This document shows positions 25,336 through 33,178 of a DNA stretch of 64,000 bases, piece after piece. Under the pieces are notes generated by a model that worked only from the letters and a program-made list of their open reading frames with translations, was not told where the DNA came from and did not search any database. The translations under genes were made by a program, and so were the position numbers. Origin of the DNA: Saccostrea cucullata (taxonomy: Eukaryota); NCBI RefSeq assembly GCF_032062105.1, contig NW_026938421.1:682001-746000 (forward strand), written 5' to 3'. How positions within the stretch are numbered: the first letter of the stretch is position 1; each line of letters opens with the position of its first letter.

Positions 25336-25850
25336 TAATGATGTATAAAAGTCAAAACATAATACTTAAAAATATTTATTTGGTCATAAAAGAAATACAA
25401 TAAGTAGTTGGTGTGATAAAATCATACTGCTGTCTCTAAAATATTTTTTAAAAAATTAAAAGACTTTTAAAATGCAATATAATCAAATAGATGGGACACA
25501 AAATGATCAATACAGATAAAATTACATTAATTTAACACTACCCTGTAAGTTTATTTTTACTTACGGAATCACTCAAAAATATATCACAAGATATCCAGTA
25601 AAAATGCATCATACATGTACATCTATTAAAATGTACAATCATTTCAAAACAAATACAGATCATATAAAATTAGGTATTTTAAAAACAAAAAACATTAATA
25701 AATCAATGATATTTTAGAAGAATCACAGGGAAAAAATCTGAATACTGTAATTATCCTGCTAACACATGAACTTGTACCAAACACTGATATGTTTTACAAA
25801 GAGGAGGAAGGAGAAGATAGTTCCTATGATCAAGTTATGGTTGTTCTTGT

Positions 25851-25880
25851 TCACAGCTTGCTAGAGTCCTTATCTAGTCA
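25851..25880 (-). other. IDH1: Predicted stop-codon readthrough extension of IDH1 ending in PTS1 (X-LDKDSSKL*)
   Basis: - strand: TGA CTA GAT AAG GAC TCT AGC AAG CTG TGA. UGA-CUAG readthrough context and a canonical SKL immediately before the second stop. Confidence 0.85.
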
Positions 25881-28800
25881 GCTAGATTGTTTCTGGGTCA
25901 ACAGCTCAGCAATCTTGTCAATGAACTCAAATGTGTTCAGGTAATCTGATCTTTGGACACTGAAATTTAAAAAACAACAACTCATTTTTACCGCTGAATG
26001 TGAATATAAAAATGTTCATGGTATGTAATGTGCTGAATATGTGTGACACAATACCTCTCTCTATGTTCTAACTTGGTGCTATACATTGTTTGTATCTTTA
26101 TAGCAAGAGTTCGTAAATTCTTCTCGAACAAATCTAATACAAAACATGTTACGTAGGATCTCATAATATTAATATATTACATACATGTATATTACTTTTT
26201 TAAAAAAGAATTCCAATACAACATTCAGTATGAAAAATTCTATGAATAGTACTGCCTACTTGTACAATAACATTCCTTTGATTCAGATAATACTGCCTAC
26301 TTACTTCTCCATGACTTTGATACAGATAATATTGACTACTTGTTCAAGTCTTTTATTCAGATAATACTGTCTACTTACTTGTTCAAACCTTTGATACAGA
26401 TAATATTGCCTAATACTTGTTCATGCCTTTGCTACAGATAATACTGCCTACTTACTTGTTCATGCCTTTGATACAGATAATACTGCCTACTTGTTCATGT
26501 CTTTGATATAGATAATACTGCCTACTCACTTGTTCATGTCTTTGATACAGATACATGTAATACTGCCTACTTACTTGTTCATGCCTTTGTTACAGATAAT
26601 ACTGCCTACTTGTTCATGTCTTTGATACAGATAATACTGCCTACTTACTTGTTCATGCCTTTGATACAGATGGCTAGATCTTTGGTCATTATGCCTGATT
26701 CAATGGTTTCTATACATGCCCTCTCAAGGTCATCAGAGAACTTCTTTAGGGCATCATTCTTGTCCAGCTTAGCTCTGTGGGCAAGTCCCCGGGTCCAGGC
26801 AAAGATGGAAGCTTTAAAGAAATTGTTAAGAATTTTATACCTGTCATTTCAGATCTTGGTCTTGTATACAATTAGTATTTATATGCAAAGATAACTTTTT
26901 TTTTCTTCAGGAATCTTTGTCAGTCCTATAGACTTTTTTTTAAAGTAAGGTTTGATTTACACATTGACAACAAACCAGAAAACAAGACTATTTATCTAGG
27001 AACAAGTTTCATCTATATGTTTGCCAACTTTCTTATTTCAAACATAATGTAACTAATCTTAAATCATTCAGTTTATTTCAGGGAAACCATACATATTTTC
27101 TATAATTTGAGCTTTACCAATGGAGTTTGTCGATGTTTCGCTTCCTTTCTGATGTTGACGAAAATGCCTGGTTACTGTTCCGTGAGCAGCCTCGGCTTCA
27201 ATAGTTTTACCGTCTGGGCAGACCAATACGCTGGTCATCATTCCTAGGGATCCGAAACCTACAGACAGCCAGGCATAAAAATTACAAATAAACTTGTGTT
27301 TCACAGTGACCAATCTACTTCTCAGATAGACTTTTTTTGTTGCTGTGTTGTACATTTGGGTAAATATCACGAACCTTGAGCAACAGAATCAGACTGTACA
27401 TCTCCGTCGTAGTTCTTACATGCCCATACAAAGCCTCCCTCTGATTTCATGGCGTACGCTACCATGTCATCAATAAGTCGATGCTCGTACCAAATCTTTT
27501 TCTCCTCATAAGCCTTCTTGTAATCTCTAAATACATGTAAATTAAAGAATCCAATGTGTTTACTCTAAATGAATGAGAAAATTTGTTTATATATAAAATA
27601 TAATAATATTCTACTCACTTTTCATAAATTTCTTGAAATATATCTTTGAATCTTCCATCATATTTCTTCAGAATGGTATTCTTTGTACTGAAAAAGACTT
27701 CACCTTTAATACTGTATACAGGAAATTTTTGCCCCCATTTTATTTTCGTCCCTTTCGCCCTCTTCTTGATTCGGCAAATTTAAAACGGGGCAATTTCAAA
27801 TTATACAGCATAATTTCTTACACAAAACTATGACTGGGCGAATTTAAAACTGGGCAAAATTGCACGGAGTTGCAAAAGGGCTGTGCCGGAACTCAATCCG
27901 GAATTTAATTCGTTACTGTTCTAATTTTACTCTCGCTTTCATATTTCCCGCGTGGAGATCAGCAAGTTGTTTACCGATGGAATTTGGCTGTTTCATCTCT
28001 ATCAGATGACAGTGTAAGTTTGCAAACATGTTTTGATAATTATTTTTATGATATGTAACAAATTTAAAGCTATTCTTGTTATGTGCCACTTCATAAATGC
28101 AAATTTGAGCTGTTATGTACTGAAGGCTGATTTTGTCAATGTATGGTGCGCATTTTCTGTCACATGAATTAAGTGATAACTTTCATACTGGTTATGTGTG
28201 AGAATAATTGGCTGTTGAAAATCTTTGGTATTTTTTTTAATAGTTATTGATTATTTCTACATGTTATTGTTGTTTTCATTTGCAGTTTTTCACCTGATGG
28301 AATAAAGGAATCGCTACTGTAACACTCTTATGTTCATCATGTTAGCTGTCTGCAAACCTACCTAGAGGCAGCACAAGGGCGAAAATAACCCGGGGCGAAT
28401 TTAACCCTGTATACAGTATATGGTGTGCTACTGACAGATACAATAAATAAATGCTTACTGGTACAAAATCCAATTTCTTTCAATTCTGATCTGTTCACTT
28501 GTAAGCTTTAAGCTTGAGTACAGTTATCTGTAACTAAAATTTGTTTTTTTAAGATTGAACAAAATAAAAAATTCACCTCAAATATAGTGGCCATTCTTTT
28601 TGTAGAGTAAACTGGAATGAACTATGGGCAAATTCTCTTATACTCTTCAATGAAAAAAGAACATATTAATGTGAATAATATAAAATTAAAACAGTGAATT
28701 AGAATATTGCTTTTTGTAGAATTGAAAACTGCTCTCATGTCTCATAATATGCTTTGATTTATGAATGATCTTGTTATAATAATTGACTGCCACATAATGA

Positions 28801-31800
28801 ATAGAGCTTTGATTCTATTCCCAGAAAAATAGGAGAAAACCAGATATATGTTCAGTATTAAAAAGTTTAAATATACAAGTGGACCCCCTTAACCCCCACC
28901 CACCCAGGGGATAGAGTCATGATTTAGACAAAATTGAATCTGTGCTACTTGAGGATGCTTCGATATAAACATAACAAATCATGGCTTTTCTATTCTTGAA
29001 AACAAGATTTTTAAATATTCCTATGCAAATTTATGAACCCCCACTGTGATCCACCCTACCCCTGTGGCTTGTGGGGTCATGATTTGTACAATCTTTAATC
29101 TACACAATGTGATAAAGCTTTCACATGAATTTGTCTTTTCTGACCCTTTTGTTTTTGAGATTTTCAAAAGATACCATTAAATTATCTCCCCTTGAAAGAT
29201 GATATGAATAAACATAAATTCATGCTCTTTGTGCATGAATGCTTTGTGGCAAGTTTAGCTGAAATTGGCCCAGTGGTTCTTGAGAAGGAAATCCAGTCAA
29301 AGCGCCCCCTAATAAAACCGTCCCGGTCAAAGCGTCCCCTGATTTTGGTCAAAGCGTCCCCTGATTTTGGTCAAAGCGCCCCTTATAGAATTTTACAGTA
29401 AAATGATGTTACAAAACATCCCCCAAACCGCCCCCAAATATTGGTCAAAGCGTCCCCTGATTTTAGTCAACGTGCCCCGGCCCTGATTTTTGTCAAAGCG
29501 CCCCATTACATTTTTTACTTAGAAAAAATCGTCTGGGAACCGTCCTCAAGCAATGGTCAAAACGTCCCCGATTTTTGTCAAAGCATACCCTGATTTTGGT
29601 CAAGGCGCCCCCTAATTTATTTTTACAAACATGTTACGGAATAAAGCAATGGTCAAAACGTCCCCGACTTTGGTCTAAGCGTCCCCTGATTTTGGTCAAG
29701 GCGCCCCCTAATATATCTTTACAAACATATGTTACGGAATAAAGCAATGGTCAAAACGTCCCTGATTTCGGTCAAGGTGCCCCCTATTATATTTTTACAA
29801 ACGTGTTACGGAATAAAACTGTTTTGTATTTATAATATTATCATTCTTTGGCAGTTACCTGAAAAAATTCTATAAGGGGGCGCTTTGACCAAAATTAGGG
29901 GACGCTTTGACCAAACCCAGGGGACGCTTTGACCATTTCTTGGGGACAGTAAAGATTTGTTTGAATAAAAATATTTTTTTCTATAAAATATGTTAGGGGC
30001 GCTTTGACCAATATTTGGGGGCGGTATTTTTTCTATAAAAAAATTTTAGGGGGCGCTTTGACCAAAATCAGGGGACGCTTCGACTAAAACTTGGGGACGC
30101 TTTGACCGGGACATTTTTATTATGGGGCGCTTTGACTGGCTCCCCTTGAGAAGAAGTCAGAATGTTAAAAATTTACAGAGACACACAACAGAAGACAGAA
30201 CCAGGCAGACACTCTAGATCTTCAATCAGAAAGCTCAACTGAGCCTTCAGCTCAAGTGAGCTAAAAATTAATTAACTTACAATCTTATTTTTACTGCTTT
30301 ATTTAGCATTGATGAGAGCAATAATAAAACAGCAGTAAAATAATATTGTAAACAGTAGGTCTGGATACTCCAGTCCCTATAGCTCTTACCTTGTCTGTGT
30401 TATACATGGCCAGGGCTACACCTCCCGACTCTGTAAAGTCAAACACATTGTAGTTCTGTTCCTGGCCGCCATTAGCTGGTGTGAACTTGATCTCGAGTTT
30501 GCCAGGTCCAGGTACAACAAAATCTGTGGCGCGGTACTAAAAATAGAACACATCGTCTATAATACAACAAAATCTGTGGGGCGGTACTAAAAATAGAACA
30601 CATCATCAATAATACGACAAAATCTGTGGCACCGAACTAAAAATAGAACACATCATCTATGATACAACAAAATCTGTGGCACGGTACTAAAAATAGAACA
30701 CATCACCAATAATACAACAAAATCTGTGGCACGGTACTAAAAATACATCATCAATAATTCAATATGGTGGAAACTGAAACACTTGAACCTGACAAACTAC
30801 TGAATCAATATGGTGGAAATTAAAACAAATTAACCTGACAAGTTACTGAATCTTGTTCCCACATAGCTATAAAATAATCCTTTTTACCTGGTCTCCATAA
30901 GCATGACGGCCTATAACGATGCTCTTTGTCCATCCAGGTACAAGACGGGGAATGTTGCTACAGATGATGGCTTCACGAAAAACTGTTCCTCCTAAAATAT
31001 TTCTAATGGTTCCATTAGGAGACTTCCACATCTTCTTCAAATTGAATTCTGAAATTATCAAATTAAATTAATATCAATGAATTAGTTACAATAGAAAAAT
31101 AAATTAAATCATTGTGTAAAATGTGGTTCTTACCCTGCACTCAATAAAACAATGTTTGGTATCTACTCTCAACTCTGTAAAAATGTTTTTCTACCCAACT
31201 TCTATTCAATAATGTAATAATTATATGTGGTATATCATACACTACATATAATTATTACATTATTGAGTATATCTATATGTGGTGCCTAACTTAAGTGGTA
31301 ATCAGCCTTTACTTTATAATGTGAAATGTGGTGCCTTCCCTTTACTCTTTAAAGTAATATGTGATCATTAACTCTAATCTTTAACAAAATATAAGATACC
31401 TTCCTTCCACTGTTTAATATTAAATGTGGTAGCTATATACAGTATATGTACCCCAATCTGTATTAAACAAGAGATGTTGTGAAAGACTTGCCCCCCCCCC
31501 CCCTCCTCCTAGACATACACTGAAGTGTTTACAAGCCTTAATTATTTATTATGGGCAGTGTACATAGAAATGCAAAATAAATGTGTATAGATATGTGCAT
31601 AATTTGCATAGAAAACGAATGGAAACTGCAAATAAATAGAATTTTCTATCATGTCCAAGGGGCACAACTCTGTCAAAAATTGCTTGATTGCACCCAAAAC
31701 AGGAACATGACCTAGATATTCCTCTGATTAATCTGTAAACCAAATTTCATTTCAGTATGTGCAACCTCTGCAAAGAAAATGATTGAAACTGTTGGTACCA

Positions 31801-33178
31801 AAAGACAAAATAACCAACTGAAAGAGAGCAGCAAAGCAATAAGCCCACCCCTCTTCAAAGGGGGGCATAATAATATGGCACCTACCCTCCACTCTCTTCT
31901 CATCTGGGGTAATGGTGGCACACTTAATTCCCACATTGTACTTCTTAATAGCATTGGCAGCATCAATTGTTACTGAAAAAAAAATCAGAGGGAACAGATA
32001 AGTAAATCTTTATAAGGCTTTTATAAATCAGTATCACAAACAATGTAATATGTCAAATACAATACTCAAATACCCAATTACAAACTTGAACTTATTTAAT
32101 ATTCATGATTTTTATTTATTTATTTATTTTTCTTCTTTTTTTTTTTTTGAGTCCAGATGGTGAACTTTTCCTAATTCAGGAATTAAATTTTCTTAGTTTC
32201 CTTGTCTTTCCAATCCATTAAAATATTTTGCTCTATCAAATGATTTCAAAGTATTTATAATTTATTTAGCTAAACTTTTACTCTGGATTAAACCCTGTAA
32301 TATATTTTTATGTACAATCTAATATGATGAAATAACAATGTTGATTTTATAAGTTTTTTTTTTAAGCAATGAAACCTCCACTGAGGGAAATCCTTCATTG
32401 TTACCCTGTGTATACCCTGTGGTAATATTATATAACTGTTGAGTAACAAGTCTGTTATATAATCACATTCAATGTACCTTGGTCATCTGTCGCGTCTCGA
32501 TTTTCCATTCCAAGATCATAGGAATGGAGCTCTAATTCCACAAAAGGCAGGATCAACTTCTGTTTGATTAAATCCCAAATGACTCTGTAAAATTTTGAGG
32601 AAAAAAACTTTGTAGCAACTCAATCATTAATAACAATTTTAATTAAATGAAATATCATTTAGATTTTGTGAAATTAAAATAATTTAATGTTATAAAATGC
32701 CAAAGAAAACTATCAACCCTCCCTTGAATATTAAGGTGATATAAATGTAATTTGCCCCCATCCCCCCTTTTTTTAGACATGTTTCATGGCCCTTATTTTG
32801 AATGCTCTAATTATAGATCCGCCAATGAAATCCGACATGCCACATGTCATTCGATATTCTACTCATCTTTCAGAATTTAAGTAGAAACTCGTTCATGACC
32901 GAAAGAAAGCATTTAAAAAATAAATTTATATAGATAGATATTAATAACAATTTTTTCCCTCTTTCATTAGAGATGAAAATGATTTAGTATAATAAAAACA
33001 GCTGTGGACAGATGCTCCGCCCACTTTTGCATGTCTTACCGGGTCATTTCATCTCCTTGCATTTCAACAACTGGTCCTCCTGCAAAACAAAGCCAATTTA
33101 TTAATTTTTGTCATATCTTGAATTGCTTAACGATATTATTTTCTTCAGTTTAGATCGCATACCTTTGATTTTCCCCAT
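25878..33178 (-). CDS. IDH1: Cytosolic NADP-dependent isocitrate dehydrogenase
   Basis: 12 exons (-): 33178-33163, 33079-33040, 32584-32478, 31972-31886, 31048-30888, 30536-30390, 28644-28577, 27687-27619, 27526-27375, 27258-27118, 26811-26649, 25959-25878. [19 protein letters not shown] with no mitochondrial leader, [74 protein letters not shown]. Ends ...[11 protein letters not shown]. Confidence 0.97.
26250..26670 (-). repeat. Tandem repeat (35-39-bp unit, about 11 copies) of the IDH1 exon 11 end plus 5' splice site
   Basis: - strand unit ATCTGTATCAAAGGCATGAACAA|GTAAGTAGGCAGTATT. Copies degenerate with distance from the exon. Confidence 0.9.
27712..28416. mobile_element. TA-TSD MITE (related copy at about 45365-45560) carrying a nested solo LTR
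   Basis: TA|CTGTATACAGG...CCTGTATACAG|TA with GGGCGAA/TTCGCCC subterminal motifs. Confidence 0.75.
27882..28375. mobile_element. Probable solo LTR (494 bp)
   Basis: TGTG...CACA termini, 5-bp TSD AGGGC (27877-81, 28376-80), internal AATAAA at about 28301. Absent from the sister MITE at 45365. Confidence 0.65.
29287..30144. mobile_element. Foldback-like non-autonomous TIR element nested in an older HINE-type repeat
   Basis: Arrays of GGTCAAAGCG(T)CCCCTGATTTT at the left and the reverse complement at the right; TSD CTTGAGAA(G) at 29279 and 30145. Confidence 0.8.
30513..30750 (-). repeat. Tandem repeat (50-bp unit, 5 copies) of the IDH1 exon 6 3' splice site plus first codons
   Basis: - strand unit ...GATGTGTTCTATTTTTAG|TACCG(C/T)GCCACAGATTTTGTTGTA. 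The acceptor AG recurs at 30537, 30587, 30637, 30687 and 30737. Confidence 0.9.
31467..31871 (-). mobile_element. HINE-type non-autonomous element; family relatives at about 8070-8246 (+) and 42930-43350 (+)
   Basis: TTATGC(C/A)CC start, microsatellite-like segment and a shared end GGGGCATAGTGTTTCACAAACACATCTTGTT (or its degenerate reverse complement). Confidence 0.6.

What the first reader, a model, noticed from the sequence alone, without database searches (positions are those of the whole stretch)
25851..25959. IDH1 hides a peroxisomal targeting signal behind a UGA-CUAG readthrough stop
Seen: the IDH1 ORF ends ...TQKQSS-TGA with no PTS1. The - strand continues CTA GAT AAG GAC TCT AGC AAG CTG TGA, which reads (X)-L-D-K-D-S-S-K-L-stop. 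Established: UGA-CUA(G) is the best-known leaky stop context in animals and fungi. Human MDH1 and LDHB use it to make peroxisomal isoforms, and vertebrate IDH1 carries a constitutive AKL PTS1. From memory, a similar readthrough PTS1 has been proposed for Drosophila NADP-IDH; this needs checking. Inference: this animal makes mostly cytosolic IDH1 plus a minor 9-residue-longer peroxisomal isoform that supplies peroxisomal NADPH, so dual targeting is achieved by recoding. An exact readthrough motif and a perfect SKL within 8 codons are unlikely to coincide by chance. Standard annotation would miss this isoform, and I know of no description in molluscs.
Basis: partly seen in the sequence, partly recalled or inferred. 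Interest (0 to 1): 0.92.

Follow-up and report, generated by a model that had tools for sequence, protein, structure and literature searches.

The report
Oyster IDH1 hidden peroxisome address tag
The oyster gene for the cytosolic NADPH-making enzyme IDH1 has a leaky stop codon followed by a peroxisome address tag that all 11 other invertebrates checked have kept, a real feature but one already predicted in 2014 for a sea slug and insects.

Summary
Observation confirmed. The window holds the intact 12-exon cytosolic IDH1 gene of an oyster (its exons match a Saccostrea cucullata protein at 363/364 residues). The stop TGA (25880-25878) is followed by CTAG and 8 sense codons ending SKL, then a second TGA. 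The database protein stops at the first TGA. In 11 of 11 orthologs fetched (5 bivalves, limpet, chiton, octopus, brachiopod, annelid, horseshoe crab), the first stop is TGA and the in-frame extension (6-12 codons) ends in SKL, SRL, ARL, AKL or SQL. All bivalves keep CTAG. The second stop varies freely, and the IDH2-like paralog has no such tail. This is selection on a translated readthrough PTS1. Readthrough and import themselves were not shown here. New here: bivalves and the wide protostome spread. The scan had not noted this elsewhere. Verdict: new member of a known kind.

The parts
25851..33178 (-). IDH1 (cytosolic NADP-isocitrate dehydrogenase) gene, ATG to second stop, 12 coding exons, intact
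   Evidence: ATG at 33178. Local tblastn of database protein P0412 (S. cucullata, 410 aa) maps residues 6-410 onto 11 exons, with exon edges read by eye as AG/GT; exon 1 codes residues 1-5. The M. gigas ortholog matches solved cytosolic IDH1 (759 bits) better than mitochondrial IDH2 (665 bits).
25881..25959 (-). Coding part of the last exon, ending TQKQSS, with no PTS1 at the annotated C-terminus
   Evidence: P0412 ends with the same residues.
25874..25880 (-). Leaky stop context TGA-CTAG (first stop 25880-25878 plus the next 4 bases)
   Evidence: TGA in 12/12 species, CTAG in 6/6 bivalves, C at +4 in 11/12, CT at +4/+5 in 10/12.
25854..25877 (-). Readthrough extension, 8 sense codons LDKDSSKL
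   Evidence: Against Ostrea edulis, the 9 codons including the second stop differ by 4 synonymous or stop-preserving changes and 0 non-synonymous.
25854..25862 (-). Cryptic PTS1 tripeptide SKL
   Evidence: Orthologs end in SKL (6), SRL (2), ARL, AKL and SQL.
25851..25853 (-). Second stop (TGA, followed by A)
   Evidence: The codon varies among species: TGA 4, TAA 4, TAG 4.
25550..25555 (-). First AATAAA downstream, a candidate polyadenylation signal (a second one at 25380), so the extension lies within the expected 3' UTR
   Evidence: motif only, the transcript end was not mapped.

Best explanation
Functional stop-codon readthrough gives dual targeting. Most ribosomes stop at the UGA and make the 410-aa cytosolic IDH1. 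The CUAG 3' context weakens termination, so a small fraction (by analogy about 1-4%, as measured for human LDHB and MDH1) insert an amino acid (Trp or Arg for human MDH1) and continue to make a 419-aa isoform ending SKL. PEX5 imports this isoform into peroxisomes, where it regenerates NADPH (isocitrate/2-oxoglutarate shuttle, reduction of unsaturated fatty acids during beta-oxidation). Shown here: the sequence anatomy, coding-type conservation of the extension, its absence from the IDH2-like paralog, and peroxin genes in the genome. Inferred: readthrough and its rate, the inserted residue, import, and the metabolic role.
For: All 11 orthologs, picked by taxon before their 3' ends were seen and all reported, have TGA plus an in-frame extension ending in a PTS1-type tripeptide. 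The lengths differ by whole codons (6-12), the middle residues diverge, the SKL codons vary synonymously and the second stop is free, while the first stop is always TGA. The +1 and +2 frames never end in a PTS1. Oyster vs Ostrea: 4 silent and 0 replacement changes in the extension. The IDH2-like paralog has TGA-TGT and a 2-codon tail without PTS1. Vertebrate, Trichoplax and sponge IDH proteins carry the PTS1 constitutively, so the enzyme has a peroxisomal job. An RNA-type spliced M. gigas contig ends with CDS-TGA-CTAGC. PEX14 and Pex2/10/12-family matches are in the genome. UGA CUA was shown to cause readthrough in HeLa cells (PMC4207609); about 4% for MDH1, with Trp/Arg inserted (PMC5133446).
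Against: No ribosome profiling, peptide or localisation data for any mollusc IDH was found. In Stiebler 2014 the animal IDH cases are predictions only. Two Drosophila/Anopheles readthrough surveys do not name Idh in their main text (one scanned only extensions of 12 aa or more for PTS1). The residues just before SKL in oyster are partly acidic (D-K-D-S), which from general knowledge is not the best PTS1 context; no PTS1 predictor could be run. Lottia (TGA-CAA) and Paralvinella (TGA-TTA) keep the PTS1 without the CU context, so the rate may be low in some lineages.
Confidence: 0.88

Rival explanations
1. The tail is chance 3' UTR sequence or a dead relic of a once constitutive PTS1, no longer translated.
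For: The oyster 3' UTR is itself partly conserved between genera (about 60% in the first 120 nt). Constitutive PTS1 in non-protostome IDH1 offers a source for a relic.
Against: A relic would not keep frame, tripeptide and TGA across bivalves, gastropod, chiton, cephalopod, brachiopod, annelid and chelicerate while the residues between them and the second stop change. The null rate of a PTS1-like end is 3.7e-3 per stop.
Confidence: 0.03
2. The PTS1 is reached by alternative splicing rather than readthrough (CTAG read as a 3' splice site).
For: CTAG ends in AG. Splicing-derived PTS1 isoforms are known for other enzymes.
Against: Every AG near the stop was tested against the phase-2 donor of exon 11. 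None gives SKL. The CTAG acceptor gives K-stop, and one gives NKL-stop but deletes the 26 C-terminal residues. Non-bivalve orthologs lack the AG yet keep the frame of the stop.
Confidence: 0.02
3. The extension is translated, but the UGA is recoded by another route: A-to-I editing of UGA to a Trp codon, or selenocysteine insertion.
For: The first stop is always UGA, which both routes also require. Editing is abundant in cephalopods (own knowledge).
Against: No Rfam family (SECIS included) reached its gathering score in 7 orthologous loci (1.2-1.5 kb of 3' flank). There is no conserved structure 3' of the stop (z between -1.2 and +1.8 in 11 of 12, only Pecten -4). The M. gigas RNA-type contigs read TGA. 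The conserved C/CU at +4/+5 fits ordinary leaky termination.
Confidence: 0.03
4. Readthrough occurs and the tail is selected, but its job is not a peroxisomal NADPH pool (for example weak or conditional import, or a stability effect).
For: Acidic residues upstream of SKL in several bivalves; no localisation data.
Against: What is conserved is exactly the last three residues in PTS1 consensus, and constitutive PTS1 sits at the same end in other animals.
Confidence: 0.04

Closest known systems
Aplysia californica, Drosophila, Apis and Tribolium NADP-IDH readthrough PTS1 (Stiebler et al. 2014, PMC4207609, Fig. S3A/B)
   Same: Same gene, same TGA CTA context, in-frame extension ending in a PTS1 (SKL in Aplysia). 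This is an orthologous instance.
   Different: Shorter extension (8 codons here; N16-SKL listed for Aplysia). Bivalves, chiton, cephalopod, brachiopod, annelid and horseshoe crab were not in that table. None of the animal IDH cases was tested experimentally there.
Human LDHBx and MDH1x functional translational readthrough (Stiebler 2014; Hofhuis 2016, PMC5133446)
   Same: UGA-CUAG context, short extension, hidden PTS1, cytosolic redox enzyme dually located.
   Different: NAD-linked enzymes, with measured readthrough (about 1% and 4%) and shown import. Here the enzyme is NADP-linked and nothing is measured.
Vertebrate IDH1 with constitutive PTS1 (AKL/PKL/SKL)
   Same: Orthologous enzyme with a C-terminal PTS1.
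   Different: There the PTS1 is on every molecule; here it is behind a stop, so only a minor fraction carries it.
Yeast pre-duplication IDP2 cryptic PTS1 (Yanagida 2015, PMC4526572)
   Same: Cytosolic NADP-IDH partly sent to peroxisomes by a signal hidden in the 3' UTR.
   Different: Exposed by a +1 frameshift there, and by in-frame readthrough here (the +1 and +2 frames carry no PTS1).

Membership tests
IDH1 (cytosolic NADP-IDH, PF00180) | Full-length Iso_dh protein closer to IDH1 than IDH2, without a mitochondrial presequence | tested here: met
   410 aa starting MGKIKG; the ortholog scores 759 bits vs IDH1 and 665 vs IDH2; a separate IDH2-like locus lies on contig C11042.
Functional readthrough PTS1 genes (MDH1x/LDHBx type) | UGA stop with CU(A)(G) 3' context | tested here: met
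   CTAG in 6/6 bivalves.
Functional readthrough PTS1 genes (MDH1x/LDHBx type) | In-frame extension ending in a PTS1 tripeptide before the next stop | tested here: met
   ends SKL-stop.
Functional readthrough PTS1 genes (MDH1x/LDHBx type) | Phylogenetic conservation of both context and PTS1 (the filter used by Stiebler 2014) | tested here: met
   PTS1 and TGA in 11/11 orthologs; CT at +4/+5 in 9/11 orthologs (not Lottia, Paralvinella).
Functional readthrough PTS1 genes (MDH1x/LDHBx type) | Annotated C-terminus lacks a PTS1, and the organism has peroxisomal import machinery | tested here: met
   ends KQSS; Pex14_N, Pex2_Pex12 over cut-off. PEX5 itself was not searched.
Functional readthrough PTS1 genes (MDH1x/LDHBx type) | Measured readthrough above background | not testable with these tools
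   Needs a reporter, Ribo-seq or MS.
Functional readthrough PTS1 genes (MDH1x/LDHBx type) | Extended isoform imported into peroxisomes in a PTS1-dependent way | not testable with these tools
   Needs microscopy or fractionation; no PTS1 predictor was available.
Selenoprotein (UGA = Sec) | SECIS element in the 3' UTR | tested here: not met
   no Rfam match in 7 orthologous loci (3' flank 1.2-1.5 kb; the window's own 3' end was not sent); a divergent SECIS could be missed.
Structure-stimulated readthrough (3' stem-loop type) | Conserved RNA structure downstream of the stop | tested here: not met
   the window's 120 nt fold no better than shuffles (z +0.8); only Pecten folds better.

The most novel reading that the evidence does not exclude
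The readthrough PTS1 of IDH1 is a single ancient protostome trait. A UGA came to lie in front of a PTS1 that sponge, placozoan and vertebrate IDH carry constitutively, which turned full-time targeting into a tunable minor isoform. It has been kept for over 500 million years in molluscs, brachiopods, annelids, chelicerates and insects, with lineage-specific strength of the context (CUAG in all bivalves, CAA or UUA in some others). Stiebler 2014 listed only four invertebrate readthrough cases, and a later review calls such sites patchy.
Probability: 0.55. Interest if true: 0.45.

Novelty: new member of a known kind. Interest (0 to 1): 0.32.

Why it matters
It adds an unannotated 419-aa peroxisomal IDH1 isoform to oysters, mussels, scallops and clams, and it points to the source of peroxisomal NADPH in bivalves, whose peroxisome proliferation is used as a pollution biomarker (own knowledge). 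It also widens a 2014 prediction from four invertebrates to a set spanning five phyla-level lineages, with natural variants of the stop context ready for reporter tests. It does not change any principle: mechanism, gene and even a molluscan example were already published.

Tried and rejected
As a precaution I sent no letters of that stretch to any search tool afterwards; I searched with upstream exons (30390-30536, 30888-31046) and with other species' proteins and loci, and used that stretch only in local scripts. So there is no read evidence from this species for splicing, editing or the 3' end. The first homolog search (P0044) returned only bacterial IDHs and led nowhere. P0001 lay on a 961-base contig. 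Paper searches for mollusc, bivalve or Mytilus IDH readthrough found nothing further. The two other IDH1 copies in this assembly keep the 30-base stop-plus-extension unchanged, but at about 4% divergence in that region this is weak evidence and was not counted. Rejected: alternative 3' splice site (frame test), frameshift route (no PTS1 in other frames), SECIS, stimulatory stem-loop. No tree was built, so the direction of change is not tested.

Full report
Observation. The last exon begins at 25959 after a CAG acceptor and codes up to TQKQSS. The stop TGA is at 25880-25878 and is followed by CTAG. Eight sense codons read LDKDSSKL, and a second TGA follows at 25853-25851. Readthrough would add nine residues.

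The gene. The start codon is at 33178. A database protein annotated as cytoplasmic NADP-isocitrate dehydrogenase of Saccostrea cucullata (P0412, 410 aa) is identical to nine window exons at 363 of 364 residues and ends at the first TGA, so the animal is a rock oyster and the annotation omits the extension. A local tblastn places its residues 6-410 on 11 exons between 33080 and 25881; with the short first exon the gene has 12 coding exons and no break. The Magallana gigas ortholog scores 759 bits against solved cytosolic IDH1 and 665 against mitochondrial IDH2. A separate IDH2-like locus lies on contig C11042.

Chance. Treating all 42,511 stop triplets in the window and fetched loci as first stops, TGA-CTAG occurs at 9.9e-4 and a PTS1-like end of the next open stretch at 3.7e-3, jointly 3.6e-6. 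The joint pattern occurred eight times, equal to the eight bivalve IDH1 stops in that set. Alone, the site is a moderate outlier for a whole genome; the comparative data decide the matter.

Conservation. I fetched genomic DNA for 11 animal IDH1 genes chosen by taxon and report all of them. Extensions after the stop: Magallana LAGRDPSKL, Ostrea LDKDSSKL, Mytilus LEESKL, Pecten LDMEDEPASRL, Mercenaria LDSNARL, Lottia QHNSNSKL, Liolophura LRKRSSQL, Octopus LGRFKPITESKL, Lingula LAAGEAQGLSKL, Paralvinella LCDCIVHAKL, Limulus LLKSSISRL. The first stop is TGA in all. All five other bivalves have CTAG; chiton, octopus, brachiopod and horseshoe crab have CT; Lottia has CAA and Paralvinella TTA. The second stop is TGA, TAA or TAG four times each (window included). 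Lengths differ by whole codons, and the other two frames never end in a PTS1. Between the window and Ostrea the extension and second stop differ by four silent and no replacement changes, whereas the next 120 bases carry several indels. This is the signature of selection on a translated C-terminal tripeptide in the frame of the stop. The IDH2-like paralog ends TGA-TGT with a two-codon tail and no PTS1. A spliced Logan contig of M. gigas ends with the CDS, TGA and CTAGC, so the context is in the mRNA of that species.

Mechanism. Shown: the anatomy, its conservation, peroxin genes in the genome, and a constitutive PTS1 on vertebrate, Trichoplax and sponge IDH proteins. From the literature: UGA CU(A) promotes readthrough in fungal and human cells and yields about 1% extended LDHB, which the authors argue is enough for the small peroxisomal volume (PMC4207609). 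MDH1 is about 4% extended, with Trp or Arg at the UGA, and this is controlled by the 7-nucleotide context alone (PMC5133446). Yeast peroxisomal IDH supplies NADPH for oxidation of unsaturated fatty acids (PMC9549241). Inferred: a few percent of oyster IDH1 is made as a 419-aa SKL-ended form and imported by PEX5, perhaps carrying an unextended partner since IDH1 is a dimer (own knowledge), to regenerate peroxisomal NADPH. I put this at 0.88.

Rivals. Alternative splicing: no AG near the stop gives SKL in the phase of the exon-11 donor. Frameshifting, as in yeast IDP2: no PTS1 in the other frames. Selenocysteine: no Rfam match in seven orthologous loci. Stimulatory structure: none conserved. Editing cannot be excluded without reads, but nothing points to it. 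A caveat is that the residues before SKL are partly acidic in bivalves, so import strength is unknown.

What is known. Stiebler et al. 2014 state that Drosophila NADP-IDH has UGA CU and a predicted readthrough PTS1. Their Fig. S3B lists the same for Apis, Tribolium and the mollusc Aplysia californica (TGACTA, N16-SKL, score +9.7), with no readthrough in C. elegans and a constitutive signal in vertebrates. The animal IDH cases there are predictions; only the fungal Idp1 tail was tested. I found no later test and no bivalve report in the searchable library, which lacks most subscription papers. The scan's own notes on this genome hold no similar finding.

Novelty and score. This is a new member of a known kind. 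The added value is the breadth, 12 of 12 protostomes examined, which suggests one old origin rather than patchy gains; that reading was not tested on a tree. Interest 0.32.

Limits. There are no N stretches in the window, and no contig taken for human was handled.

Noticed in passing
L012 (G000:C15637 near 23127, - strand); L011 (C4884) and L014 (C7325): The MDH1-like gene of the same genome (PF02866 match; MDH1 by recalled resemblance) also has a readthrough PTS1: TGA-CTG then LPARL-stop in L012, but TGA-CCG then PPARL-stop in the other two copies. This is a natural variant of the readthrough context on an intact PTS1.
   Followed up: partly
window 26271-26671: A tandem repeat (period 39, 10.5 copies) in the last IDH1 intron is made of copies of the end of exon 11 plus its GT donor, with about 17-18 copies in the other two gene copies. 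An in-frame TAA overlaps the true donor, so use of any distal donor would truncate the protein.
   Followed up: partly
window 30513-30745: A tandem repeat (period 50, 4.7 copies) repeats the acceptor and the first codons of exon 6 upstream of the real exon, giving decoy 3' splice sites.
   Followed up: no
G000:C12436 (L005), G000:C16479 (L006) vs window: IDH1 is present three times in the assembly: two copies 99.4-99.7% alike and the window copy, which differs (exons 91-97.5%, intron-rich blocks 80-87%, 5 amino acids). MDH1 shows the same 2+1 pattern. This suggests uncollapsed, strongly diverged haplotypes or mixed lineages rather than a gene-specific duplication.
   Followed up: partly
window about 33558 onward, + strand; L015 and L018 positions 1-1160: A DJ-1/PARK7-like gene starts head-to-head with IDH1, about 380 bases away (ORFs). 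The same arrangement, labelled PF01965, is in Magallana and Ostrea but no gene is called within 1.5 kb in Mytilus or Pecten. Two redox genes may share a bidirectional promoter in oysters.
   Followed up: no
L020 15427-15546 (Pecten maximus): The 120 bases after the Pecten IDH1 stop fold much better than shuffles (z about -4), unlike the other 11 species.
   Followed up: no
P0484 (Halichondria panicea): The sponge NADP-IDH of 450 aa has both an N-terminal extension resembling a mitochondrial presequence and a C-terminal SRL, recalling the single triple-targeted gene of Aspergillus nidulans.
   Followed up: no
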